Positions 8,501-51,931 of a stretch of 64,000 nt of DNA are shown piece by piece; position 1 is the stretch's first letter, and the number at the start of each line of letters is the position of its first letter. Origin of the DNA: Macrostomum lignano (taxonomy: Eukaryota); assembly GCA_002269645.1 (NCBI GenBank), contig NIVC01000225.1:124001-188000 (forward strand), read 5' to 3'. The notes beneath the pieces were generated by a model. That model worked only from the letters and a program-made list of their open reading frames with translations, was not told the DNA's origin and ran no database searches. Both the position numbers and the translations under genes were made by a program.

Positions 8501-9577
8501 GCCGCTCACCTACGAGCAGCGCATCAACGAGGCCGTCTTCCCCGGACTGCAGGGCGGCCCCCACAACAACGCCATCGCCGCGGTGGCTGTGGCCCTCAAG
8601 CAGTGCATGTCGCCGGACTTCAAGGCTTATCAGCAGCAGGTGAGGCTCTGGTTCAGGTAGCTTTTTAAGCCCCCCCCCCCCCAGATACTCAGTTGCTGGG
8701 CCGCCACCCTCCCAGATCCCCAGTTGCCTTAATTCCACCCTCCCAGATCCCCAGTTGCCTTAATTCCACCCTCCCAGATCCCCAGTTGCCGGAAATCCAC
8801 CCTCCCAGATCCCCAGTTGCCGGAAATCCACCCTTCCAGATCCCCAGTTGCCGGACATCCACCCTCCCAGATCCCCAGTTGCCGGACATCCACCCTTCCA
8901 GATCCCCAGTTGCCGGACATCCACCCTCCCAGATCCCCAGTTGCCGGAAATCCACCCTTCCAGATCCCCAGTTGCCGGACATCCACCCTCCCAGATCCCC
9001 AGTTGCCGGACATCCACCCTTCCAGATCCCCAGTTGCCGGACATCCACCCTCCCAGATCCCCAGTTGCCGGGCCACATAGACAAACGCCGCCCACTTCCC
9101 CATCGCCCGCAGGTTCTGCTGAACGCCCAGGCGCTGGTGGCCCGACTGAAGGAGCTCGGCTACTCCATCGTAACTGGCGGCACCGTCAACCACCTCTGCC
9201 TCGTGGACTTCCGGCCGCAGGGCGTCGAAGGCGCCCGGGTTGAGAAGTCGCTGGACCTGGTGGGCATCACCGCCAACAAGAACACCTGCCCCGGCGACCG
9301 CAGCGCCCTGCGCCCCAGCGGCCTCCGCCTGGGCACTCCGGCGCTGACCAGCCGCGGCCTGTGCGAGGCCGACATGCGCCGCGTTGCCGACTTCATCCAC
9401 CAGGGCGTCCGGCTGGCCATCGACGCCGGAACCAAGCTGGCCGCACCCGGCCGGCTGGCCGACTTTGAGCGGCTGCTGCGCGAGGACGCCGAGCTCGGGC
9501 CGCGCACCGCCGAGCTGCGCCGCCAGGTGCACGAGTTCGCCAAGGGCTTCGCCATGCCCGGCCTGGCCGAGTTCTGA
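5535..9577 (+). CDS. SHMT: Serine hydroxymethyltransferase (PLP-dependent), about 460 aa, 5 coding exons
   Basis: Exons 5535-5819, 7331-7501, 8075-8369, 8473-8639 and 9113-9577, all GT..AG with consistent phases. Motifs: [42 protein letters not shown], the PLP lysine motif [30 protein letters not shown] and [13 protein letters not shown]. Confidence 0.97.
5880..7245. repeat. 19-bp minisatellite (ATTCCCTGTGGATTGCATC)n in SHMT intron 1
   Basis: Tandem array seen directly. It accounts for the many Cys/His-rich spurious ORFs at 5812-7262. Confidence 0.95.
7600..8025. repeat. 18-bp minisatellite (GGTATTCACAGTTTCTCA)n in SHMT intron 2, with an internal duplicated block of about 110 bp
   Basis: Tandem array seen directly. 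The TGAGCATTCGCGGTTTCTCATGAACATTCTG block occurs near 7753 and again near 7860. Confidence 0.9.
8700..9070. repeat. 31-bp minisatellite (CCACCCTCCCAGATCCCCAGTTGCCGGACAT)n in SHMT intron 4
   Basis: Tandem array between the donor at 8640 and the acceptor at 9112. Confidence 0.95.
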
Positions 9578-18900: not shown

Positions 18901-20179
18901 CCCCAATCCCTTCTCAAAAACAGGGAGTGATTGCATGTTTTGGCCATAGATATAGCCAATAGCTATCTTAAACTAGTAGATAGAGACATAAAATATATAT
19001 ACTACCACATCTTAAACTTGCACAAGTTAAATATTTACTTGTAGTAACTAAGGTAAGGAAGTTCTTTTTATTAAATATTTAAATGTGAAAATTTAGAAGA
19101 TTGCCAAATTTTCTTTCATACATAATGGATTAGGGAGTGGGGCTTGGTATATATTGTTGCATATCATAGTATGATCAATGCACTTAGTATTTATAGATTA
19201 GTTATAAATCAATTTTAAGTATAACAATTCATACGTGCCCAACACCTATCCAACCTGTCCAAACTAGATGGGTGAAATGGCCACTGGCCAAGGTAAGTTG
19301 CAAATTTTAAAATGCAAAAAACAAAAAATTGGGAGAAGAAAAAAGGAAAGGAAGAGAAAAAGAAAAGAAAGGAGGGAGAAAAGAGAGAGAGGGGAAAGAG
19401 AAAAGGGAAAAAGGCAATAAAAGTAATATACAAAGTGAAAATTAAGTTGCAATTGGGGGAACTAAGTCGCAATCAGGAGAAACTAAGTCGCAAAGCTGGA
19501 CAAAACACTAAGTTGCACCTGACGGGTGAAAATTTGAGGTTGGGCATATATGTAATAATTGAATATAATGGGCCTATATATTAGGCCTTGGTTGAATGTG
19601 AATTTTAGGTCATGTGTGATTCAATTTTTTTCTGTCATGATAGTATATGATTTGTGGTTGTGATTTTTAATTTTTATGTTCCATTAAAACTAAAAAACAC
19701 TTTCCTTCTAAAGAAAATCATATATACTACTGTTATAATTATAATGTTTAGAATTTGTTTGTTTGTTTAGAGTCATTCAATCTTAAAAACAGTTTCTAAT
19801 GAGTTTTTTGGCACAAGAAATATTATTTAATATATATTATAAATATAGAAGTTTTAAAATAAGTAGTATGTAGTTTAATTCATTTTGTTTATCTTGATCT
19901 CATAACTTTTTGGCATAGATATAGATTTCTCAAAGCCACTTTTTATCCTAGTATACACTTGAAATCTTTAAGACTATGGCAAAAAGGAGAGAGCAAGGTT
20001 AATTTATCCCTTTGGTAAACCTAGGTTAAAGGTATAAGGGAGACCAAGCAACCTTTTGGCGATACCCTGTGACAAATATCTGGTCCGAGAGTTTGCATGC
20101 TGACGGGCTGCTATTCAAGTAGTGATTGAAAACATAGTTAGTGGAGACCAATAACTGATAGAGCCAATTATTCTATTAT

Positions 20180-20788
20180 GGATTACTGTCGCCAAGGTCA
20201 GCTCTGGCTCCATAAGCAGTCGCTCCCTGATGTGGTTGCTAAGCACTTTCTCGACGAGCTGGTCACGCAGCATCTCCTCCTGGAAGGTCTTGAAGTCGCA
20301 GTTCGAAGTCAGGTTTCGTAGCGCGGCAACGAAGTCGCTGATCTTCTCGCCCGGTCGCTGAGCTCTCTGTTGGAATCTGTGCCTCTCAGCAACTACGTTG
20401 ACCTTAGGTCCGAAGTGCGTGTCCAGGAGCTTCAGCGTGTCATCGACTGTTGCTGGCGGATGCTCTTCTTCCTCTTGATTGCGGCTGGCCTGCAGAGACA
20501 TGTAGATGTTTTTTCCCTCTGCACCCAAGCAGTGGATGAGCAACGCTTGTTTTCTTAGCTCCAGCAGATCGATGGCTCCCGATGCTAGCAGGTAATTGCT
20601 GAACATTGCTTTCCATCGGTTCCATTCAATCAGCGGTGCTCCAGCGGCTGGCAGAAACGGCTGCGGTGGCGATATGTTGAGACTCATTCTGTTGGCTGTA
20701 TCTCTGCTTGACTGTTGGGCTGCTGCTTGTTGGGACCCTCGCTGTGGGTCGCCAATCGCACTTGCATTTGTGCCTTCTGTGCTGCTCA
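20180..20788 (-). mobile_element. Truncated Ty3/gypsy-type gag ORF
   Basis: WNRWKAMFSNYLLASG..RKQALLIHCLG..HFGPKVNVVAERHRFQQRAQRPGEKISDFVAALRNLTSNCDF..EMLRDQLV is typical retrotransposon gag. It breaks off after EPELTLATV, with no pol or LTR seen. Confidence 0.8.
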
Positions 20789-20945
20789 TGACTTGGCAGA
20801 TTTGAGTTCGCGCTTTTGCTGAGTCACGCTGGCCCAAATCAATTGATTTCTCCGTGCGACGCCTAAATGTAGTGAGCGAGAGACAAGCCAGTCAGGTTGA
20901 GCAAGGTATAATTGTACTTTTTGCCCATCCTTTCAGCTTTAAGCG

Positions 20946-25485: not shown

Positions 25486-27927
25486 ATGGCAACTGCGTCA
25501 TTGGCAACGTCGCTAACCTCCGTGGTTGCCATGGCGACACCCGGCGGCAGCAATGCGGAGTCTGCAGAGCGGCTGCTAGCCAAACTGAGCCTGGAGACTC
25601 CCGAGCAGCCCGATAGTTCCACTGCAGCACCACCACCAGTCGCTAAGGACGCCGATTCGGTTCCTACGGACGCCGATTTGGTTCCTACGGACGCCGCTGT
25701 GCCGCTCGATCTCTACCTGGAATCTGACGAGTCCGGCCGCGCCCTGACTCTGCAGTCCAAAGCGGCGCTACTGATGGCGCTGTACCCGGAGCCCCGGCCC
25801 TGCCGAGTCCACCTGACTGGCGGCTCTGCTGATGAGGCTGAGGAGAAGCTGGCTGGCGAAGTCGTGCTCGTCCACGGCGGTGCCCGCAACCCCGGCACGG
25901 AGCTGCCGGCCCTGGCCTGTCCGGCCGTGCTGTACGCCGGCCTGCCTTCCGTTGTACGCGCCCTGGCAGAGCGGGGCGGCGCCGTCTGTCAGGCGCTGCT
26001 GGGGCCGCACAGCGTCTGCCTAAAGGCCTGCAAGGAGCGGTCGCGGTGGACCCGCCTATGCGAGCTGACCTGTCCCGGCCAGCTGGGCACCTGGGCGCTG
26101 CCGGGCTCCGACGATGCGCAGCCGCCCGCCTGCCTGGCGGACCTGGAGCTGGCGTTGGAGCGGCCGCGCTACAAGCCGAGGCCTTTTCTGGAGGGCAAGC
26201 GGCCTACTCTGGTGAGAATTCTGGAGTTATTTCCTACTCAAAGTAGTAAAGTACTCGTAGTTCAACGGTATCGCATCTGTCTCGTGCTGGAGTCGTTCTG
26301 GAGACCAAACCTCAAGGCTCAGAGTTGAAGCCTGCGTACGGATTGCTCGCATGCTCAGGGGCAGCCGCGCAGGGTATACAGCGGCCCTGACTTTATCACC
26401 GTCAGTTATGCTGCATCAGTCCCCTACTTTATTCTCCATTATCACCTTTGTCTTCGGGGGCCGTAGCCCAGTGGTCCAGCGAAAGTCGCGCGAGTTACCA
26501 CTAAGAACCACTGAGTAGTCCTTGGTGGTTACCGCTGAGCTCCTCTGCCTCTCGTTCTCTGTATTGCGCTCAATAAGCGGTGTCAATTAAAATTTCCCAA
26601 AACTGTCCAATCCTAGGTGGACATTCTCATTGTCTGCTACTTGCGCGACGTTGCCCGCAAGGCCAACCGGCCGCCGCTGCCGCTGGGGCATCGAACCGCG
26701 GACCTGCTGGCCAGACTGAGCGCCGATCCGGCCTTCGCCGCCGCCGCCGCCGTAACCGACAAGTTCGAAACCGAGTACCGACCGGCCGCCGGGGACGCGC
26801 CGCGGCTCACCGACAAGCGGGCTCAGGTTGGGGTTTGCGTACTCGAATGCTTTTAAACATGCGTTTAAATTTTATGCACCAATATTTTTGCAGACTAATT
26901 CGCTTCAAAGGATAGTGCTATCGCTACTAGTTAGTAGGCTGTAATGTGCATATAAAGTCGACAATTTTCAAAATTGGTGCATTTGTGAGGAAATCCTTTT
27001 TATAAAAATTCTTACATTTTTTCCGCATCTTTAGCATACCCAGATCGCCTACTGAAAAGTAGCAAGTAAAGAATGTGAAACTAATCTCTTATGGCGTGTA
27101 CCTCTCACATGTATTGTTTCTTAACCCCCGAAACCCCACAGGTGCCCGGTCTGTGCACCGAGTCGCTGCGCCAGCTGCTGGACCGCCTGGAGCCGGCCGT
27201 GTCGCTGCCCTGGCAGCCGGAGGCCGAGGCTTCCCCGCTGCCGCCCCTGCCCGACTGGCTGGCCGCCGAGGTGCCGCCGGAGCGGGCGGCTCGCAAGCGG
27301 CAGCAGCTGGCCAGCCTGGCCGCTGACGTCCTGCCGTTGGCCCGGCCCGGTCACGTGATCGTAGACTTCTGCAGCGGCTCCGGTTACCTGGGCCTCCTGC
27401 TGGCGCACCTGCTGCCGCAGTGCCGCATCGTGCTGGTGGAGAACAAGCTCGAGTCCCTGCAGTTCGCTCTGGACCGGCTGGGCCAGCTCGGGCTCCCCAA
27501 CGTGCGCATCGTGCAGAGCAACCTCTGCAACTTCCGGGCCGCCTTCGACATCGGCGTTGCCCTGCACGCCTGCGGCTCCGCCTCCGACCTGGTGCTGGAG
27601 GCCTGCGTCCGCGCCCGCGCCGCCTGCGTGCTGTCGCCCTGCTGCCACGGCGCCACCAAGCCCGGCCCGGGCCTCGCCTATCCGCGCAGCTCCGCCGCCT
27701 CGGCAGCCGGCCTGGCCAGCCTGGAGCACGCGCAGCTGTGCCACGCCGCTGACCGAATCACCGGCCGGCAGTCCCGCCAGCTCTTGGCTAAGCGGGCCCT
27801 GCGGCTGCTGGACAGCGACCGGGCCCTGGCCATGCGGGAGGCCGGCTACGGCCGGGTGCGGCTGGCTCTGATGCGGCCGGACACCTGCTCGCCTAAGAAC
27901 TCAATCCTGGTGGCCTGTCCGAGCTGA
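25486..27927 (+). CDS. GSTCD: Glutathione S-transferase C-terminal domain-containing protein with class I SAM methyltransferase domain, about 573 aa, 3 exons
   Basis: Exons 25486-26211, 26617-26826 and 27142-27927, all phase 0. RAARKRQQL..L...ARPGHVIVDFCSGSGYLGLLLAHLLPQC.IVLVENK, FDIGVALHACG.ASDLV, SPCC.G and CSPKNSILV match GSTCD closely. Confidence 0.93.
26456..26560 (+). mobile_element. Possible tRNA-derived SINE head fragment in GSTCD intron 1
   Basis: GGGGCCGTAGCCCAGTGGT contains a Pol III A box. There is no B box or cloverleaf, so it is not a tRNA. Confidence 0.3.
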
Positions 27928-33568: not shown

Positions 33569-38645
<5,077 letters not shown>

Positions 38646-38734: not shown

Positions 38735-39166
38735 GCTTGGCTGCATGTACAGCTTGACTGCATCTACAGCTTGGTTGGATGTACAGCTTGGCTGCATGCA
38801 CAGCTGGTACACTGCATGTACAGCATGTACAGCTTGCTGCATGTACAGCTTGGCTGCATGTACAGCTTGGCTGCATGTACAGCTTGGCTGCATGTACAGC
38901 TTGGCTGCATGTACAGCTTGGCTGCATGTACAGCTTGGCTGCATGTACAGCTTGGCTGCATGTACAGCTTGGCTGCATGTACAGCTTGGCTGCATGTACA
39001 GCTTGGCTGCATGTACAGCTTGACTGCATGTACAGCTTGGCTGCATGTACATCTACAGCTTGGTTGGATGTACAGCTTGACTGCATGTACAGCTTGACTG
39101 CATGTACAGCTTGGCTGCATGTACAGCTTGGCTGCATGTACAGCTTGGCTGCATGTACAGCTTGGC
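38735..39166. repeat. 17-bp minisatellite (GCTTGGCTGCATGTACA)n downstream of the Mnx stop codon
   Basis: About 24 units between the stop (38645) and AATAAA (39605). Confidence 0.95.
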
Positions 39167-39604
39167 TTAGTTACATGACCGATTTAGTATTGAAATCGAT
39201 AAAAAGATATTAAAAATTAAACCCTCAGATCCCTGATCAAATTCAACTCAACCAATGCAAACTGGACTCCTGCAGGTACATGCAATCAATCAAATTACCC
39301 AGGTGACTCGATGAAAGTAGGCCTTCAAAAATCGTTTTGAGTATTTAATTATGATGTCCCTGAGCCTCCAAGGACATGGCCGAACTCTAGTAAAGAATCA
39401 ACAGCAGCCTCTTGTACATAGCTGATATAAACCTGGCTGGCATGGCAACTGGCAACACTCTGTACATAGTACTTGTCCGCTCCAATGCATGAATCTGCTA
39501 ACCCGCAATTCCGCTTCAATAACCCGCTTATTAACAGTCTGTGGCCCCGGCCGCCCTGCTAGTCCTCGCGCAGCGGTTTGTTATGAATTTCAATTTCTGA
39601 TGAA

Positions 39605-39957: not shown

Positions 39958-40158
39958 TGATCCCCAATCTGGATCCCCAATCTATCCCCCACAACACACC
40001 CAGGATCCCCAATCTACCCCCACAACACACCCAGGATCCCCAATCTACCCCACAACACACCCAGGATCCCCAATCTACCCCACAACACACCCAGGATCCC
40101 CAATCTACCCCACAACACACCCAGGATCCCCAATCTACCCCACAACACACCCAGGATT
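39958..40158. repeat. 30-bp minisatellite (CCCCACAACACACCCAGGATCCCCAATCTA)n just 3' of the PCGF stop
   Basis: About 6.5 units, G-rich on the PCGF sense (minus) strand. Confidence 0.95.
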
Positions 40159-40186
40159 CCCAGCAGATGTTATCGTCAAGTTTCAG

Positions 40187-40816
40187 TCAGGAGTCGCGCG
40201 AGCTCCTGGCCGCAGCGGAGTCGCGGTCCGCGATCACGTAGGTGAGGGCGATGGGGTCCCGCCAGTCGGCCTGGCCGTCCGTCTCCCTGCAGCGCAGTTT
40301 CTGCAGCTCGGCGAGGCTCCAGTAGGCCGGCAGGCGGGTGTTGCGCCTGTAGATATCCACCGTGCCGGTGGCGGACAGGCGGTGCTGGTCGCAGAGGAAG
40401 CCGGCGACGTGGCCGATGGTGGCCTGCATTGCCAGCAGCAGGAAGATCTGGCGCTGGCCTCCGCGCGGGCTCAGCGCGATCTGCACCGGAGTGGCCAGCT
40501 CCAGCGGCAGCGACTTCTCCAGCTCCAGGCTGAAGTCCAGCCGGCGATGCACCTCGCTGGCCCGCAGGCCGGGCACCAGCTTGTACACCAGGTCCTGCAG
40601 CACCCGGTCCTGGCGCAGACAGCCCTCCTCCTCCAGCTTGAGCTCCTGGCCGCACTCCGGACAGCGGCTTGGCCGGACAGTCTGCAGGTGGCCGACAATA
40701 CAAGACTTGCAGAACACGTGGAAACAGTCGGTGAGGCGGGTGGCGTCAATCAGGTAGCCAGCGCAGAGGCTACACACTAGGATGTTGTTGAGCTGCCTGA
40801 GCTGCGGCCTGCCAGA
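40187..40816 (-). CDS. PCGF: Polycomb group RING finger protein (PCGF/BMI1 family; C3HC4 RING plus RAWUL-like C-terminus), single genomic coding exon without an ATG
   Basis: SGRPQLRQLNNILVCSLCAGYLIDATRLTDCFHVFCKSCIV...RCPECG...QDRVLQDLVYKLVPGL contains the PCGF signature D+.LQD+VYKLVPGL. The exon starts at acceptor CCTCAATCCCGCAG with a CTGAC branch motif upstream. Subfamily not resolved. Confidence 0.9.
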   Translation of the reverse strand, partial: SGRPQLRQLNNILVCSLCAGYLIDATRLTDCFHVFCKSCIVGHLQTVRPSRCPECGQELKLEEEGCLRQDRVLQDLVYKLVPGLRASEVHRRLDFSLELEKSLPLELATPVQIALSPRGGQRQIFLLLAMQATIGHVAGFLCDQHRLSATGTVDIYRRNTRLPAYWSLAELQKLRCRETDGQADWRDPIALTYVIADRDSAAARSSRDS

Positions 40817-43800
40817 CTGCGGGATTGAGGTGAGCAGTCAGCACTCAGCTTGAGCAGTCAGTCTGGGCACGACATTAAAGCTGCTAATCTAGATGACGTA
40901 GTGACTTCAATTGGAATATATAGAAGCATTATAAAATAATTAAAAATTCTTTGTAAGGCTGAGGTCATACACCTGAACACATAAATAAAAGACCTCTAAA
41001 GCAATGCTATATGGTTTTTGGTGCTCGATTAGTTTGTCCATTTTTTAAATGTTTCTAAAAAATGGAACTGCCCGAGGACGCGCGGCGTTATTAAAGACAG
41101 ACGCCTATGTTTTCGTATGTCTATGTCCGAAACCCATAGAATTGAAAAGAGGGACGCAAAAGCGAGAGAAGACACAGCATCAAAGGAGTTCTAACTGACG
41201 CGTTTATCACGTACTGGACATGAACCTGGGGTAAAGTGGAAGTGGTCCTACAACTGCCAGTCTGTCTTCTGCTAAACAAGGGACTCCTAAAATAGCATTA
41301 GAGTGCTAGCTCTAGAAGTCCCTGGCTAAGCCCTGATTTACCCTAAAAGTTATTCTATAAGCTGTGCTACTTGTTTGGCATTACGAGGCCATAGTCAATG
41401 AATTCCAAATATATAAACAACTTCAGTGTCACTGGGGTGAGTTTGGGCCATAGACAGCTTGCAAAAGTAGTCCCTGCAGCAGGTTTGTAGAGCTACAGAA
41501 TCAGAGAGCAACCAGCTAAGCCAAAATGGAGTTCGCCTTGGCTTTGGTGGGTGCCAGCAGCACAAGTGTATATCAGGTGTTGCAGACCCATGGACCAACT
41601 GCAGGGAATCAGTGAGATGTTTGCAAATATGGTAATTCCAAGTTCTGCAAGATATTGATTGCCATTTGACATGCAAAGAGATGGCTAGTACTCTCTTTTA
41701 AGTGTACATCCTCATTCAAGATCTTGGACTTGGGAATGTCACAGCCAGCCCTGGCAGAAGCACCCACAGAGTATGTCACTGGGTCTTATTCATGATGTAT
41801 GACAATACCAGTTTATACACTGCCATAGGACTATTAGTAGAAAATGCTGCCTTTTTTCACCAAATTCCTCTGACAAGGATAGTTGTATTTGAAAATAATT
41901 GTGCAATTAATTATATAACTCACAATCATATATCCAGAAACTATCATTTCAAACCATTGGGAATATATAATTCAAGCCAATCAATTTAATTAACTAAAGT
42001 AGCATTCATTTTATAATATTTCTAGCATTGCAAATATGTTCTAAGAATTATCTATTAGGCCTAACTTTGATATCTAAATAAATATAGATATGACAAGTGA
42101 TAACAAAATTAAAAACAAAATATTAGCAAGATTAGGCAGTAGGTTGAATGATTAAGACTAAAAATGCAACTGTTATTTAATATCTTGTTTTTTGCTATAC
42201 TAAAACATTCTGCCTTAAATAATACATTTGTACTTTTATAATGTTATGTTTCTAAAAAGAGTATTGACTTATATTTATAACTATGGCTATGTTATTGACA
42301 AAATTTTATATTTAAGGCTCCTTCTTTAAGCTAGTGATAATTGGCATAGGTGCACTCCCAGGGGGAAGAAGGGATAGTCACCTCTTTTAGCAAAGACCTA
42401 AACAGAAAATAAAATAAAAGGAAAGATTAAACAAGTGAATTTTTATAAAAATATAGTCTAGGTAGAGCCATTCTATCTAGGTCTTTACTATCTAGAATTG
42501 CCATTCTTCAAAAAATTCAGGTTGCACCATTGATTTGGCAGATCAAATAGAAGGCAAGCCAAAACAAGAACCATGCCCCTGCCCTGCCCTGGCCCAATGC
42601 CAAGTGGCCAAGCCATATGATTATGAAAATAATTAATTGGTAAATTTATTGAAGAAATAACCCGTAATATAAGGTATAAGTTTTTGTGCAATCATTATAT
42701 AATTTACCCCTAGCCTAAAAATTGCTGAAACTGGGCTAAAACCTATATGGCTTGCCCTGTTGGTTAAAAAGTAAATATTTTTTATAAAACTTGTACTGTA
42801 GCAGTCTAGTAGTAGTGTCAATGTGCTAAATCAGAGTGGTTGGTGGTTGTTGCACATAATGTAAAAAAATAGCAATTCTTTGTTTGAAACTGGAAATGAT
42901 TAATCAAGTATGCATCGTTGACTCTTTAGATTCGACTTGATTGCAGCTGCATAACATAAATAACCACTGACGATTGATCCATGCAGTTTTTGACTAATAT
43001 TACATATCGGATTTAATTTCTGTGATCTTTGATTCTAGGAATTTTACGGGCTTATGCCTGTAAAAATATGTATTAATATAGCTAGAAATTGTGTATTTAT
43101 TATTGTTCACTGTTACAGTTTATTTCGTCACACTTCCGAATTGATTCTCAAAATCTCAATAAAAAATCTTCTTGGCTTGCTATGGGCAAACTAGGTCGCA
43201 GTTTTGGCAAAATTGATTGCAGTTTTCAAAGAGTTGTCTGTGGCTGAAACTTGTCATGACTGAGCAGACTTGGCCTAGACAGCAAAATTATAAGTGATAT
43301 TTTTCCGCGGGCAAAATTGATTGCAGTTTTGGCAAACTAGATCGCAAAAAGGTATATTTATATATGTCTAGCTCGTATATACTTAACTACATTCGAATTT
43401 GCGCATACTTGGTCTTTTGTTGAATTTTGAATGGAAAGTCTGGCTTCTACATGTACATGTATGAGCATTAGTATGTTTTAAGATTAAATGAACCGCATGC
43501 TTTGCATTCAATTGCTTCATACCTGTACATCCGCGCCTGTCCCCACTGGTTCACACGACCTCGAAACGACATCGAATCAAGCAGTATACCTCGATTTGAC
43601 TATATTCTGGTTTTTCCAACAATTTGTTTATATAAACCATCCCCGTGGTGTCGAATGTATTAAAAAACATAGATTTTTTAAAAATTAAAATGAAAAAGTA
43701 TGACGTAATGACATCGTATCCATGCCGTAAAGTAGGACCTCGTTTGTACGATAAAACTTCGATAAGAAGTTGATAGTTCAAATTTTTGACAACAAAAAAC

Positions 43801-47184: not shown

Positions 47185-49147
47185 ATGGCTTCTAGACAAA
47201 CAGCAAATCGCTACATCCGTGAATATCTGTTGACTCTGATGTCAGCAGACAGCACTGCTAATTGTGTAGAGGATGAGAGTTTGTCTGAAGTTTCTGCTTC
47301 ATTTCAACTTTCTGAAGCTGAAGAGTTTGCGAATCCGCACGTGTGGAAAGACCTGGCTCCAGATGCTGGTGAAGACAATTCGGAAATCCCATATTGCTAC
47401 TCGCACGAAAGTAGTGGTGAATCTTCTGATACAAGCGATGACGAGTCAGGTTCTGCAACAAGCAATCCGCAAACAAGCCGCCCTTCGCTGCCGGCGAAGC
47501 TTCTGACTTTCATGCTGATATTTTCTGTTAGCAAAAGAGCTATGCAACACCTTTTAGTAATTCTGAACGAGGAGGGTTGCAATGTACCGAAGTCGGTCAG
47601 CACTTTGAAACGCTATTGTCAACCTATTTCACATGACCTTTTATCTGTCGCATGTGGTGGCCAATTCGCCTACTTCGGTATTATGAACAATATTCGTTTT
47701 TGCTTCGAACGCCAGCTTTTAAAGCTCAATGATCACTTCCAGAAGTTGACAATATTAGTCAACTTTGATGGGGTTCCCGTGTACAAGAGCTCGAAAATGT
47801 GTCTATGGCCCATTTTGCTTGCCATTAAAGGTGTTGATTTATCTGTCCCTTTACCAATCGGAGTTTTTTGCGGCATCAACAGGCCACCATTGAGTACGTA
47901 TCTTGAGAGTTTTGCTCAAGAGTTGCGCTCTTTAATGGAAACTTACGTTTCCATTGCTAATAAAGCTATAAAAATCGAACGCTGCATTATTATTGCTGAC
48001 GCACCTGCCCGTGCGTTCATTCAAGGAATTTACAGCCATTCGGCTAGACTCGCATGTGGATATTGCAAAATTGAAGGCTCTCGTATTGAAAACCGTATGT
48101 GCTTTCCTTATAATCAATATGAGCCACGTACCAACGACGCTTACATGTCCATGCGTGAAAGTAACCAACTTGTATCTTCTCCATTACTCGGCATTGTCAA
48201 TTTCGTGGAAGATCTCCCCCTGAATACATGCATTCGGTGTGTCTAGGTGTTGTGAAGCGTTTGTTTTCTTTATATGTTTCTTCTATTAAGGGTATTAAGT
48301 TACCGTGCCGATTGTCTGCTGTTCAGAGAATTCATCTTTCGCAGCTAATGATTCAAGTTTCTAAGTGCTTGCCCCGTGAGTTTCACAGAAAGCTCAGAAG
48401 CCTCGACGAATTCGAGCACTTCAAGGCGTGTGAGTTTAGGACTTTAATTGTGTACCTTGCTCCCGTTTTGTTTCGTAAGTTTCTACCAGCTCCTTATTTT
48501 GACCACCTGATGCTATTGCATGTAGCAATCTTTTGCTTTGTTTCACAAGAGCTTTCTACTTCTCTGTTTCATCAAGCATCTTCTTGTATTACACTTTTTT
48601 GCCAGAGAGCTCCAGGATTATACAAAGGTGCTCTGCAATCTTTTAATGCGCATCTGTTATCCCACATGCCTCATTTTGTAGAATCACTCGGTCCATTGGA
48701 TCAGTGGTCTGCATTTTTTTCGAAAACTACAACGGAGTTTTGAAGCGTCGCTTAAGGTGCACATCAAATATTTTCATGCACACCATAAATACTATGTCTC
48801 ACATTCGAAACGCTTTTGTTACTACTACTTCTCGCCCGCTATACTTTTCCTGCGCGTCGCCGGACAATTGTTGTATTACTCAATGTGGTCATGTACTTGC
48901 TATTTCAGCTCTATCTATCGAGTATGGGCGCACAAAAGTTATTGGTAAAATTATTCAATTTGTTAGAGACATGTACTCTTTTCCATATAGCTCTTCATCA
49001 ATAGGCATTGGTATATATAAACTGACAAACAATAGCGTTTATGATGCCACGGCAAAGTCCAAATGTATTCTGATACCACGTGAGAGCAATGAGTATTTCG
49101 TTATTCCTCTCGCCAATCCTGATTTGGCTCTCTTTTCGCCATCCTAA
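47185..49147 (+). CDS. CMC/EnSpm-type DDE transposase (about 654 aa if two single-base homopolymer deletions are corrected)
   Basis: LVNFDGVPVYKSSKMCLWPILLAI, IIADAPARAFIQG..SHS..ACGYC, (P)EYMHSVCLGVVKRL, FKACEFRT...Y, H.LSH.PHFV..LGPL..WSAF.FENYNG.LKR. Frameshifts at the C5 run 48216-48220 and the T7 run 48714-48720. Confidence 0.85.
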
Positions 49148-50021
49148 TCCTATTTTGACTCCATTCTACTTCGGGTGTGTCATAAGTAATGCCACTGCAT
49201 CCTTCTGTCTAAAGTATGTAGGCATATGCACTTAAGGGTGGTCCAGCTGCAACGTATAATTCACCATAAATCTCAGCAAGACGCCTGCGCCAAGCAGATT
49301 CGCATGGACTTTTCCAAAAGGAGTTTTCGCAAAGTATGAAGATGTCAACAGGCCGTGTTGCACTGGTTCCGGCAGCTGGAGGAAAAACTGGAGGAAGGCT
49401 GAGGTGGAGAAGCTGTATGAGCACTGCCAGGGGTCGATTGATATTGGGGGGACACTGTGTTGTTGATTGATACGGTTTTGTTCATCTGCGGTTGTAAGTT
49501 TGTCTGTTTTCACATCACTCAGTGACATTTCTTATGACACACCCGAAGTGTATCGGTATTTTGCGTCTTTGTTTCGTGTTTTACGGTTTAAATTCTCACA
49601 AAAGTCTTATGCATTATTGGCTTGTGTAAACATTGGGACTTTTAATTAATGCTCTTGAAGAATGAGCTCCAGTTTGACTTTAACTTCTTTATTTTTTATT
49701 TGCACTTTGGATATTATAAGTATAAAAAGATACTTAACTGCTTGTAATCTTCAAGTTTTGTTCATATTTTTAGATAATGAACCGCCGTTATTTTAAATTA
49801 CTAGTCCACCCAATCTGCATGCTGCCCTATACTTTCTTTTTATATCTAGTTAGCTTGTATCGACTATGGGGAGCTAGAATACTGCCTAGAACTTGTTCGC
49901 CTGCCAAATTCCTTTACCGAGGATCGCTTACTAAAAGTAAAATTATTGAACAAATGCTAAAATTCTGATAATTTTCTCAAAACTAATTAAATAGCCAGTC
50001 CATTTGTTTAAAATTGCAGAA

Positions 50022-51931
50022 ATGTCGCAAGCAGGCGAGTCAACTGCATTTATGCTGTTTTTTCGGACTTTTAATCAATTCCGCGTAATTGCTGGTGATT
50101 TCATAGATTTGCCGCACCGCAATTGGACAGAGGAAGACTGGATGGACACTGGGTACGCAGAAGTCGCTGTTGACTTGCAGGACGAAAATGGATCAAGTAC
50201 AGGCATTGTAGTCCAAGTGGCTACATCTATTACCGATCTAAATGAGACATTTAAAAAGGCAAAGGATCTTCGCTACAAAAAAAACTTCTCGTTGGCCAAA
50301 ATCCTGACGTTCTTTCGCCGTTTTAAGTCCGGTCGGGATCACGTGCCGCCTATGAGAAACCTAACTACCGAAGATGAGCAAACCGATGCAGATTTAGATG
50401 CTGCAGCAGTACGAGTGAAGGCTTTACCTGCACAGCATCAACAACAGCAAGAGATTCAGCTGCCATCAATGCCTGCCAAAAATGCACCATTAACTACACG
50501 TACAATTTCGAATGAGTCAGCGGTTGAGACTACTGTTGTTTCGACAGGCGTGTCTACGAATTTGGTTAGTCATGCATCAGCATCGTTTGCCCCTCAGCCC
50601 CGCGGTGGTGGAAGGTTTCAGTCAAATCTACGACCGTACATTCAGTCGCTGCAGGCGCAGGGTATTGACCCCTTCTCTCCGGACGGTCATACTCATCTGC
50701 TGCTCCTTGTCCTTACGGAAGTGACTAAACTAAAACAAACGATTGCAGAAATCAGACCTGCTGCGTCAATGGCCAACACCAACACGGCAATTGATTTGGG
50801 CCTTCCTATCAAGGACCGTGAAGAATACGCCGCTTTCTCGAACCGCGTCAAGGAGAAAAATTTCCGACAAAGTATTGTGAGTCTGACCGCATGTTTATTT
50901 TTCTGAGTGCATATTATACAGACAATCATTTATGGCATGTTTGGATTGAGTAATTTCCCTATCCTGTATACTTCGCATATCGAATGTCATGGTCAACAAT
51001 TTCAAAGTCAAAAGCTAAGACTTAGTGGATATTTTTGATTTAATCAAATAACTATAATATTTGAAGCAGGTGCTTCTGATTGCATTTTTACCTAAGTCTG
51101 ATGTCATTGACATCATTGTAGGTTGCTTATCTCCGCCGGCTGGGCGGCCAGTCAGTTGACAGAATGATTACGTCAATGGTGGATGCACTACTGGCAACTG
51201 ATTTTCAACGCCAGTTTAATTTGACTGGGAAGGATTACAGCCAGCAGGGGCGGCCGAGATCGAAGATATCGTTTCGTGAATCTATTGAGCCCATTATCAG
51301 CGGTAAGTCACATACTCTGTGAAGCGTAGTTTTGCAGGAGAATCATAATCCGATTTATTATTTAGTAGTGGCTATTGTTTTTAAAACAAGAGTAAATTTA
51401 CTAAGTTTTCTTAATTCCTACATAAAATATAGGAGAATAGAATTAATTACTGTAGAGAACCAAAATTTATCGTAAAGGGAAGGAAATTAGATCGTATACC
51501 AATGCAGTGCGTTATCAGACTAAATACTATACAGTATGCTGCAGTTGTTGTTTAGAAACTTTCATAACTTCAGGGTCATATCAGTTATTTTCAGCTATTA
51601 TGCCTATCTACTTACGCAATATAGCTTTATTCAGATGTTAGCTCTAATATATTGGCCTATTGATGGTATTTTAAGTATGCAAATTTAATCTTTTTTTCCA
51701 GAAGCAATGGCCACGTGCAAGCCGCCAGTCACGTCGGCTGAGGTCACCCGGCGCATTAGTCGCTATCTGCAGGATGTTGGCCAGCGTTGTAAAGCCCTAA
51801 CGCGCTTAAACCCTCAGCCTGACGGCAATGAGGAAAGCCAAACCGAGGGACGCGATTCTGCCGACTGCGACAGCGAGGATGAAGATTTTGAACCACTTCA
51901 CAAGAGAGTGGCAAGGCAAAGGGAGACCTAA
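50022..51931 (+). CDS. Transposon accessory protein (DUF4806-like C-terminus), about 421 aa, 3 exons
   Basis: Exons 50022-50876, 51122-51302 and 51702-51931 with GT..AG and phases 0 and 1, giving an uninterrupted ORF. LPIKDREEY..F...V.EKNFRQSIVAYLRRLGG.SVDRMI..MVDALL..DFQRQFNLTG..K.SF resembles DUF4806 proteins seen beside such transposases. Confidence 0.72.

What the first reader, a model, noticed from the sequence alone, without database searches (positions are those of the whole stretch)
40187..40880. PCGF gene with no genomic start codon: frame begins exactly at a splice acceptor (spliced-leader-donated AUG)
Seen: the minus-strand RING ORF has no in-frame ATG before the RING. Directly upstream is a branch motif (GCTGAC) and acceptor (CCTCAATCCCGCAG, plus-strand 40817-40830), after which the frame starts in phase 0 as TCT GGC AGG CCG. 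Adding one AUG gives MSGRPQLRQLNNILVC, 15 residues before the first RING Cys, close to the N-terminal length of PCGF3/BMI1 proteins. The nearest upstream ATG (about 40875) runs into TGA before the acceptor, and splicing it at the adjacent GT gives the wrong frame. Established: flatworm spliced leaders end in AUG, and that AUG can act as the initiator Met. Inference: this Polycomb gene is only translatable after SL trans-splicing, which would make the SL machinery an obligatory gate on a PRC1 subunit.
Basis: partly seen in the sequence, partly recalled or inferred. Interest (0 to 1): 0.8.

Follow-up and report, generated by a model that had tools for sequence, protein, structure and literature searches.

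The report
Flatworm Polycomb gene lacking start codon
A small Polycomb-type RING gene of the flatworm Macrostomum lignano has no start codon of its own and most likely borrows the AUG at the end of the spliced leader, a mechanism known in flatworms since 2006, so the case is real but ordinary.

Summary
The minus-strand ORF 40816..40187 (209 codons plus stop) encodes a complete PCGF-type protein: a RING with all eight zinc ligands plus a RAWUL/ubiquitin-like domain. Its first in-frame ATG is at codon 130, and an in-frame TGA lies 21 nt upstream of an acceptor-like CCTCAATCCCGCAG. This is true in all four copies in the assembly. The window is Macrostomum lignano Mlig_3_7 (NIVC01000225.1:124001-188000). 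This flatworm's 35-nt spliced leader ends in ATG, and 30-39% of its genes are trans-spliced. The ORF looks functional: GC3 is 0.90, and against the divergent copy it shows 3 substitutions, all synonymous, and no indels. The three public transcript-based CDS records are all 5'-partial. They start 3-12 nt downstream of the acceptor, and none has an upstream coding exon. SL trans-splicing at 40817|40816 giving M-SGRPQLRQLN... is the best explanation (about 0.6), but I could see no SL-containing read. A cis-spliced mini-exon (ATGATT|GTGAGT at 41929) cannot be excluded from sequence. SL-donated initiator AUGs are established (Cheng et al. 2006; more than 40 Schistosoma cDNAs) and are already allowed for in Macrostomum annotation. 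This is therefore a new member of a known kind. The "obligatory gate on PRC1" reading is unsupported.

The parts
40187..40816 (-). Open reading frame of the PCGF-like gene: 209 sense codons (SGRPQLRQLNNILVC...RDS) plus TGA at 40189-40187. Single exon, no in-frame ATG before codon 130.
   Evidence: GC3 is 0.90 against 0.42 GC upstream. Against copy L003 there are 3 substitutions, all synonymous, and 0 indels.
40652..40774 (-). C3HC4 RING finger (ORF residues 15-55) with all eight zinc ligands present.
   Evidence: Pfam zf-C3HC4 2.3e-8. phmmer to BMI1/PCGF1/PCGF5 RING chains, 1e-20 to 1e-29. Foldseek to BMI1/PCGF5 RING, TM 0.75-0.82.
40226..40489 (-). C-terminal ubiquitin-like (RAWUL/ULD) domain, ORF residues about 110-197.
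   Evidence: Pfam RAWUL is only faint (0.071). The AlphaFold2 model has pLDDT above 87 here with a beta-grasp topology. Foldseek matches the polycomb ULD 5fr6 and the PRC1.1 core 5jh5_C, TM 0.78-0.79.
40817..40830 (-). Candidate 3' splice (trans-splice) acceptor CCTCAATCCCGCAG. The junction lies between 40817 and 40816, phase 0.
   Evidence: The hexamer CCGCAG differs from the published trans-splice motif [T/C]TNCAG by one pyrimidine. The same hexamer forms the homeobox intron acceptor at 38382-38387. The C-tract length differs between copies.
40837..40842 (-). Branch-point-like GCTGAC, with the A at 40838, 21 nt from the AG. It contains the in-frame stop TGA 40840-40838.
   Evidence: It is part of the 10-nt direct repeat TGACTGCTCA (40860-40851 and 40840-40831).
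40792..40810 (-). Further AG acceptors just inside the ORF. GGCAG|G (exon from 40808) would put the SL AUG out of frame. CCGCAG|CTC (from 40801) is in frame. CTCAG|G (from 40796) is out of frame. GGCAG|CTC (from 40792) is in frame.
   Evidence: None has a pyrimidine tract.
40858..40875 (-). Nearest upstream ATG with a 5-codon uORF (MSCPD, then TGA). It is out of frame in the window and L005. In L002 and L003 it is in frame but still terminated by the TGA.
40817..41416 (-). Presumed outron and proximal promoter. It carries nine ATGs, all followed by early stops, and no GT[G/A]AG donor. It is less diverged between copies than sequence further upstream.
   Evidence: uORFs of 3-36 codons. (no GTRAG in the 1,100 nt upstream; 1.6 expected, P(0)=0.2). 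(1.5% mismatches here against about 3.7% at -600 to -2000).
41918..41929 (-). Rival first exon: ATG ATT followed by the consensus donor GTGAGT. It is the only GTRAG donor within 3 kb upstream and is phase-compatible with the 40817 acceptor (1,107-nt intron).
   Evidence: ATGATT|GTGAGT is conserved in all four copies. It is AT-rich and is absent from the public CDS records.
39971..40162 (.). 30-bp tandem repeat (6.3 copies) starting 25 nt 3' of the stop codon, probably in the 3' UTR.
   Evidence: Copy number differs between genome copies.

Best explanation
This is an intronless PCGF-type (RING plus RAWUL) gene of Macrostomum lignano. Its mRNA most likely acquires both its 5' end and its initiator codon by spliced-leader trans-splicing. 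A promoter within the few hundred bases upstream makes a pre-mRNA whose 5' part (the outron) is full of short uORFs and has no in-frame AUG. The spliceosome joins the 35-nt SL (...UUAUUGCAUG) to the acceptor CCCGCAG at 40817|40816. The SL's terminal AUG then sits directly in frame with UCU GGC AGG CCG, giving M-SGRPQLRQLNNILVC..., a 210-residue protein. Its N-terminus has the same length as short PCGF homologues. Shown here: the missing genomic ATG in all copies, the acceptor anatomy, the organism and its SL sequence, the protein family, the signs of constraint, and the 5'-partial public CDS records. Inferred: that trans-splicing happens at this site and that the SL AUG is the codon used.
For: (1) The window is M. 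lignano Mlig_3_7. Its SL ends in ATG, and 30-39% of all genes and 45% of human-conserved genes are trans-spliced. (2) No copy has an in-frame ATG between the upstream stop and the RING. (3) The ORF behaves as a functional gene. GC3 is 0.90. Against L003 it has 3/630 differences, all synonymous (P about 0.016 if neutral), and no indels, while the 2 kb upstream has 60 mismatches and 23 gaps. It has an intact RING and a confident two-domain PCGF fold. (4) The sequence immediately 5' of CAG is not constrained to a frame, because the C3/C4 tract length differs between copies. (5) The acceptor is near-consensus with a pyrimidine-rich tract and a CTGAC 21 nt upstream. No GTRAG donor lies within 1.1 kb upstream, which is the condition for an outron cited (Conrad et al. 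1993). (6) The GenBank annotation was built from RNA-seq-guided transcripts with TransDecoder. Its three CDS records for this gene start at GRPQ, PQLR and QLRQ, without a Met and without an upstream exon. This implies annotated transcript 5' ends within 12 nt 3' of the acceptor. (7) With the SL Met, the first Cys is residue 16, as in short PCGFs such as P0012, METSIKLSDLNEFISC. Homology to BMI1 begins at residue 4. (8) Use of the flatworm SL AUG as initiator is experimentally established (Cheng et al. 2006, as cited). Macrostomum annotators keep the SL ATG on reads as a start codon.
Against: I could obtain no SL-containing read, cDNA or protein record for this junction. An exact look-up of MSGRPQ... 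and nine alternative N-termini found nothing, and supplement searches for PCGF/BMI1 found nothing. None of the three public CDS records starts exactly at TCT, as an exact cut at 40816 would give. The window's record (PQLRQ...) would also fit a 5' end at 40808, which lies after GGCAG| and where the SL AUG would be out of frame. The acceptor misses the consensus T at -5. The four copies are too similar (99.5-100% in the CDS) to show long-term conservation, and no orthologue from another Macrostomum species was retrievable. The inference from 5'-partial CDS records is partly conditioned: a transcript extending past the in-frame stop would have had no CDS called at all, and copy L005 indeed has none.
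Confidence: 0.6

Rival explanations
1. An ordinary cis-spliced gene whose first, very short coding exon lies upstream. The best candidate is ATG ATT|GTGAGT at 41929-41918, spliced over a 1,107-nt intron to the same acceptor, giving MI-SGRPQ....
For: It is the only consensus GT[G/A]AG donor within 3 kb upstream, it is phase-compatible, and it is conserved in all four copies. The intron length equals the species mean of about 1.1 kb.
Against: Candidates of this kind are expected by chance: 12 ATG..GTRAG combinations in 10 kb, and roughly 0.2-0.3 per donor. The surrounding sequence is AT-rich and is as diverged as neutral flank (3.3% against L003), and the longer 8-codon version is broken by an indel in L005. 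Conservation between copies rises towards the acceptor rather than around this exon. All three transcript-based public CDS records are 5'-partial, whereas a spliced first exon would have given a complete ORF.
Confidence: 0.17
2. A start codon split by a 65-nt intron. AT|GTCGTG (donor at 40873) is joined to GGCAG|G (exon from 40808), rebuilding ATG CCG CAG and giving MPQLRQLN....
For: The junction is in frame (sequence). The window's public CDS begins exactly at PQLRQ.
Against: The donor GTCGT does not fit the species consensus GT[G/A]AG. The acceptor has no pyrimidine tract. The public record lacks the Met that such a splice would give, the other two records start at other codons, and the exact sequence MPQLRQ... 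is not in the collection.
Confidence: 0.03
3. The mRNA is not given an AUG at all. Either the RING frame starts at a near-cognate codon (CTG directly after the in-frame TGA, or GTG at 40777), or the locus is transcribed but yields no PCGF protein, that is, a young non-functional duplicate.
For: An in-frame CTG follows the TGA in both the C3 and C4 versions because the TGACTGCTCA motif is duplicated. No protein-level evidence exists. The gene is divergent (about 50% identity in the RING only) and intronless.
Against: Both CTGs have poor context (T at -3, C at +4) and lie behind nine upstream AUGs. The two versions would give different N-terminal extensions. A GTG start would remove the conserved N-terminal helix. 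Three of three synonymous changes, no indels, GC3 of 0.90 and a confident fold all argue against decay.
Confidence: 0.1
4. SL trans-splicing occurs, but mainly at another nearby acceptor. The sites at 40801 or 40792 are in frame and would give MLRQLN... or MLNNILVC.... The site at 40808 is out of frame and would give a 13-codon ORF and no PCGF.
For: Five AGs lie within 40 nt, and CCGCAG recurs at 40807-40802. The ragged starts of the public CDS records do not pin the junction down.
Against: Only the 40817 site has a pyrimidine tract and a branch-like CTGAC at a suitable distance. The downstream sites follow purine-rich sequence.
Confidence: 0.1

Closest known systems
Flatworm mRNAs that take their initiator Met from the 3'-terminal AUG of the spliced leader (Cheng, Cohen, Ndegwa and Davis, J Biol Chem 2006; called 'slORFs' in PMC9851317)
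   Same: The organism's SL ends in AUG. The ORF has no genomic AUG. An AG acceptor lies in phase 0 immediately before the conserved coding sequence. The outron carries out-of-frame uAUGs that trans-splicing would remove.
   Different: There is no cDNA or SL-read evidence for this gene. The species (M. lignano, a free-living macrostomid) and the gene (a PCGF) are not among the published examples I could find.
PCGF family (PCGF1/3/5, BMI1), the RING1A/B partners in PRC1
   Same: PCGF-type C3HC4 RING preceded by the short N-terminal helix, the VYKLVPGL motif, and a C-terminal RAWUL/ULD fold.
   Different: It is shorter (210 aa), with a very short RING-RAWUL linker. The RAWUL is barely detectable by sequence (Pfam 0.071). 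It is only about 50% identical to the nearest homologues, and only over the RING. It is intronless with GC3 of 0.90. Its assignment to a particular PCGF subgroup and its binding to RING1 are untested.
Neighbouring trans-splice-type 5' end in the same window (413-aa gene, 50046-51931 +)
   Same: Its public CDS is also 5'-partial and begins a few nucleotides 3' of a consensus TTGCAG acceptor.
   Different: That gene has its own in-frame ATG (50022) 3 nt after the acceptor, so the SL AUG would be out of frame and is not needed.

Membership tests
SL-AUG-dependent flatworm mRNAs | The organism performs SL trans-splicing with an SL that ends in AUG. | tested here: met
   The window is NIVC01000225.1 of M. 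lignano. The SL is CGGTCTCTTACTGCGAAGACTCAATTTATTGCATG (PMC8629364).
SL-AUG-dependent flatworm mRNAs | No in-frame genomic AUG between the upstream in-frame stop and the conserved coding sequence. | tested here: met
   Searches show this in all four genomic copies.
SL-AUG-dependent flatworm mRNAs | A 3' splice acceptor in phase 0, located between the in-frame stop and the conserved domain, with no cis donor nearby upstream. | tested here: met
   CCCGCAG|TCT at 40817|40816. There is no GTRAG donor within 1.1 kb, although one lies at 41923.
SL-AUG-dependent flatworm mRNAs | SL sequence found on the mature mRNA at that junction. | not testable with these tools
   No read-level data were accessible. 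The only indirect support is the 5'-partial transcript-based CDS records. Exact look-ups were negative.
SL-AUG-dependent flatworm mRNAs | Translation starts at the SL AUG. | not testable with these tools
   This needs Ribo-seq, N-terminal proteomics or a reporter.
PCGF (Polycomb group RING finger) proteins | N-terminal C3HC4 RING of PCGF type. | tested here: met
   Of 48 PDB matches, the twelve best are all BMI1/PCGF1/5/6 chains. The profile search returns PCGF1/3/5.
PCGF (Polycomb group RING finger) proteins | C-terminal RAWUL (ubiquitin-like) domain. | tested here: met
   Sequence support is weak (Pfam 0.071). The model is confident and matches polycomb ULD structures.
PCGF (Polycomb group RING finger) proteins | Heterodimerises with RING1A/B and assembles into PRC1. 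| not testable with these tools
   Not addressed here.
Downstream gene of an SL-resolved operon | A same-strand upstream gene within about 1 kb (repeat-adjusted). | tested here: not met
   No called gene on the minus strand lies within 10 kb upstream, and the neighbours at 47185 and 50046 are on the + strand. The upstream region is AT-rich.

The most novel reading that the evidence does not exclude
The cluster of acceptors makes translation of this PCGF paralogue switchable. Trans-splicing at 40816 (or 40801/40792) puts the SL AUG in frame, while use of 40808 or 40796, or failure to trans-splice, yields an mRNA with no usable start. Acceptor choice or SL availability, for instance in neoblasts where 85% of enriched genes are trans-spliced, would then set the level of a PRC1 subunit after transcription.
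Probability: 0.08. Interest if true: 0.55.

Novelty: new member of a known kind. Interest (0 to 1): 0.2.

Why it matters
If confirmed, this adds one well-defined example, a chromatin regulator in a transgenesis-capable flatworm, to the known class of genes that can be translated only after SL trans-splicing. Its practical value is for annotation. The public records for this gene are 5'-partial and could be completed by adding the SL Met. Gene finders that demand a genomic ATG will miss or truncate such genes. It does not open a new question about Polycomb or about trans-splicing unless acceptor choice or trans-splicing efficiency proves to be regulated.

Tried and rejected
(1) Retroposed SL relic. 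The sequence upstream of the acceptor shares ACTGC...CTCAAT...GCA with the SL. However, the local alignment score (16) is reached by 9-11% of random or CAG-ending 45-mers of the window, so I rejected this. (2) There is no SL RNA gene in the window.

(3) I searched the supplements of Wudarski 2017, Grudniewska 2016 and Grudniewska 2018 for PCGF, BMI1 and polycomb and found no hits. A full-text search for Macrostomum plus PCGF returned only one irrelevant review. (4) An exact look-up of ten modelled N-terminal variants in the 15-billion-protein collection found none. This is uninformative rather than negative.

(5) A first exon ATG(41041)...CAG|GTGTAT of 23 codons, in phase, is rejected. GC3 is 0.39, the donor is off-consensus, and a 4-nt deletion in L003 breaks the frame. 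(6) My first argument was that the C-tract indel abolishes the in-frame CTG start. I corrected this: in the CCCC copies the duplicated motif supplies another in-frame TGA-CTG. Non-AUG initiation is still disfavoured on context.

(7) A profile search for M. lignano paralogues or flatworm orthologues returned only distant PCGF1/3/5 sequences, mostly vertebrate. (8) A look-up of the methyltransferase-like ORF, meant to list more annotated genes, found nothing on record.
Full report
What is there. On the minus strand a single open reading frame runs from TCT at 40816 to TGA at 40189-40187, 209 sense codons in all. Upstream in the same frame lie CAG, CCG, ATC, TCA, ACC, CTC, CTG and then TGA at 40840-40838. 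The first in-frame ATG is codon 130. The nearest upstream ATG (40875) reads MSCPD and stops.

Which organism. The encoded protein is on record on contig NIVC01000225.1 of assembly GCA_002269645.1. The window is bases 124001-188000 of that contig. [quoted passage not shown] The species has one 35-nt spliced leader, CGGTCTCTTACTGCGAAGACTCAATTTATTGCATG, which ends in ATG. About 30-39% of its genes are trans-spliced. The enriched motif at trans-splice acceptors is [T/C]TNCAG, and at cis donors it is GT[G/A]AG (PMC8629364; PMC5730564).

What the gene is. Pfam finds a C3HC4 RING (2e-8) and only a faint RAWUL. The best matches among solved structures are BMI1, PCGF1, PCGF5 and PCGF6 RING domains (1e-14 to 1e-29), with homology starting at ORF residue 3. 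An AlphaFold2 model built on 12 sequences is confident (mean pLDDT 86). It shows a RING domain followed by a beta-grasp domain. Foldseek matches the first domain to BMI1/PCGF5 RINGs and the second to the polycomb ULD/RAWUL structures 5fr6 and 5jh5. All eight zinc ligands are present. It is a PCGF-type protein, though a divergent one. The nearest database homologues are sponge, arthropod and annelid PCGFs, about 50% identical over the RING only.

Is it a live gene? The assembly holds four copies: the window, L002, L003 and L005. Three have identical coding sequence. L003 differs at 3 of 630 positions, all at third positions and all synonymous, which has a probability of about 0.016 under neutrality. 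There are no indels in the CDS. In contrast, the 2 kb upstream of the two loci differ by 60 mismatches and 23 gaps. GC3 of the ORF is 0.90 against 0.42 GC just upstream. This argues for a functional coding sequence, although gene conversion between young duplicates cannot be excluded.

The missing start in all copies. All four copies lack an in-frame ATG. Two copies carry CCCC and two carry CCC just before GCAG. The frame is therefore not preserved across the 5' side of the acceptor, whereas the 630-nt ORF has no indel at all. Because the motif TGACTGCTCA is duplicated 20 nt apart, one or the other TGA closes the frame in each version.

How the mRNA could get an AUG. (a) SL trans-splicing at 40817|40816 puts the SL's AUG directly in frame, giving MSGRPQLRQLNNILVC. 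(b) Cis-splicing could join an upstream exon. A scan of 10 kb upstream for ATG...GT[G/A]AG first exons in a compatible phase gave 12 combinations on five donors. Only ATGATT|GTGAGT at 41929-41918 lies within 3 kb, and it is conserved in all copies. However, it sits in AT-rich sequence that is as diverged as neutral flank, and hits of this kind are expected by chance. A closer candidate, ATG 41041...CAG|GTGTAT, is broken by a 4-nt deletion in L003. (d) Near-cognate initiation at the CTG after the TGA has poor context and lies behind nine upstream AUGs.

Transcript-level evidence. The only evidence I could reach is indirect. The GenBank annotation of Mlig_3_7 consists of TransDecoder ORFs on RNA-seq-guided transcripts, cut at SL and poly(A) signals where such signals were available. 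The three public protein records for this gene begin GRPQL..., PQLRQ... and QLRQL..., with no Met and no upstream exon. A 5'-partial ORF call requires the transcript to begin 3' of the in-frame stop. The annotated transcripts therefore start within about 12 nt 3' of the acceptor. This is what an SL junction looks like when reads are mapped end to end. The neighbouring 413-aa gene shows the same pattern: its CDS starts 24 nt after a consensus TTGCAG acceptor, even though an in-frame ATG lies in between.

There are caveats to this inference. No record starts exactly at TCT. The window's record would also fit a 5' end at 40808, where the SL AUG would be out of frame. Copy L005 has no call at all. 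Exact look-ups of ten modelled N-termini found nothing, and the supplements searched do not mention the gene.

Acceptor quality. CCGCAG differs from [T/C]TNCAG by C for T at position -5. It is preceded by a pyrimidine-rich tract and by a CTGAC 21 nt upstream. The same hexamer is the acceptor of the homology-defined intron in the MNX-type homeobox 2.4 kb away, whose donor is GTAAGA. No GT[G/A]AG donor lies in the 1.1 kb upstream, but this is not significant (P about 0.2). Divergence between copies falls towards the acceptor, from 3.7% to 1.5%. This fits a proximal promoter and outron better than an intron.

Comparison with what is known. That the 3'-terminal AUG of flatworm SLs can be the initiator Met was shown by Cheng et al. 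in 2006. In Schistosoma mansoni the SL AUG is in frame in 28% of trans-spliced transcripts, and more than 40 cDNAs need it (as summarised in PMC9851317). The feature is described as conserved across flatworm SLs. Macrostomum annotators deliberately leave the ATG on SL-trimmed reads because it is a start codon (PMC10468722). The present case is thus a plausible new example of a known mechanism.

Nothing here indicates that trans-splicing is regulatory for this gene. It is not the downstream gene of an operon, since no same-strand gene lies within 10 kb. I could not establish whether M. lignano has other PCGF genes with ordinary starts.

Verdict. The main rival is a cis-spliced mini-exon (about 0.17). 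Novelty is low: this is a new member of a known kind, with interest about 0.2.

Noticed in passing
window 37971-38460 (+): An MNX/HB9-type homeobox. The homeodomain (Pfam 1e-23) is split TETQ|VKIWFQNRR by a 288-nt intron, 38100-38387, with donor GTAAGA and acceptor CCGCAG. No gene is called here in the public annotation list. The ORF leading into the homeodomain runs through a 30-bp satellite read as [10 protein letters not shown] repeats.
   Followed up: partly
window 37278-37890 and 39971-40162: Two related 30-bp tandem arrays (20.5 and 6.3 copies) that share CCAATC(C/T)A(A)CCCCACA. One lies inside the homeobox upstream ORF and the other just 3' of the PCGF stop codon. Copy number differs between genome copies.
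   Followed up: partly
window 38735-39167: A 17-bp tandem repeat (GCTTGGCTGCATGTACA, 25.5 copies) between the two convergent genes. It produces long spurious ORFs in several frames.
   Followed up: no
window 50014-50060 (+): The neighbouring 413-aa gene (50046-51931) is annotated as 5'-partial, although an in-frame ATG at 50022 lies 3 nt after a consensus TTGCAG acceptor. If trans-spliced there, the SL AUG would be out of frame and would open a 23-codon overlapping ORF.
   Followed up: partly
window 47185-48246 (+): An intronless 353-aa ORF with only a weak DUF1258 match. It is duplicated with its neighbour on NIVC01001059 and may be transposon-derived.
   Followed up: no
window 40831-40860 (-): A 10-nt direct repeat, TGACTGCTCA, occurs twice 20 nt apart in the outron. 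Combined with a C3/C4 tract polymorphism between copies, it means a different TGA closes the frame in different copies, and in the CCCC copies the 40875 ATG is in frame but stopped after five codons.
   Followed up: yes
window 8693-9577 (+); 20115-20837 (-); 27091-27927 (+): Other coding pieces in the window: a serine hydroxymethyltransferase C-terminal exon (Pfam 4.5e-35), a PNMA/gag-like ORF (5.5e-7) and a methyltransferase-like ORF (1e-11). The last, as read from ATG to stop, is not a recorded gene product.
   Followed up: no
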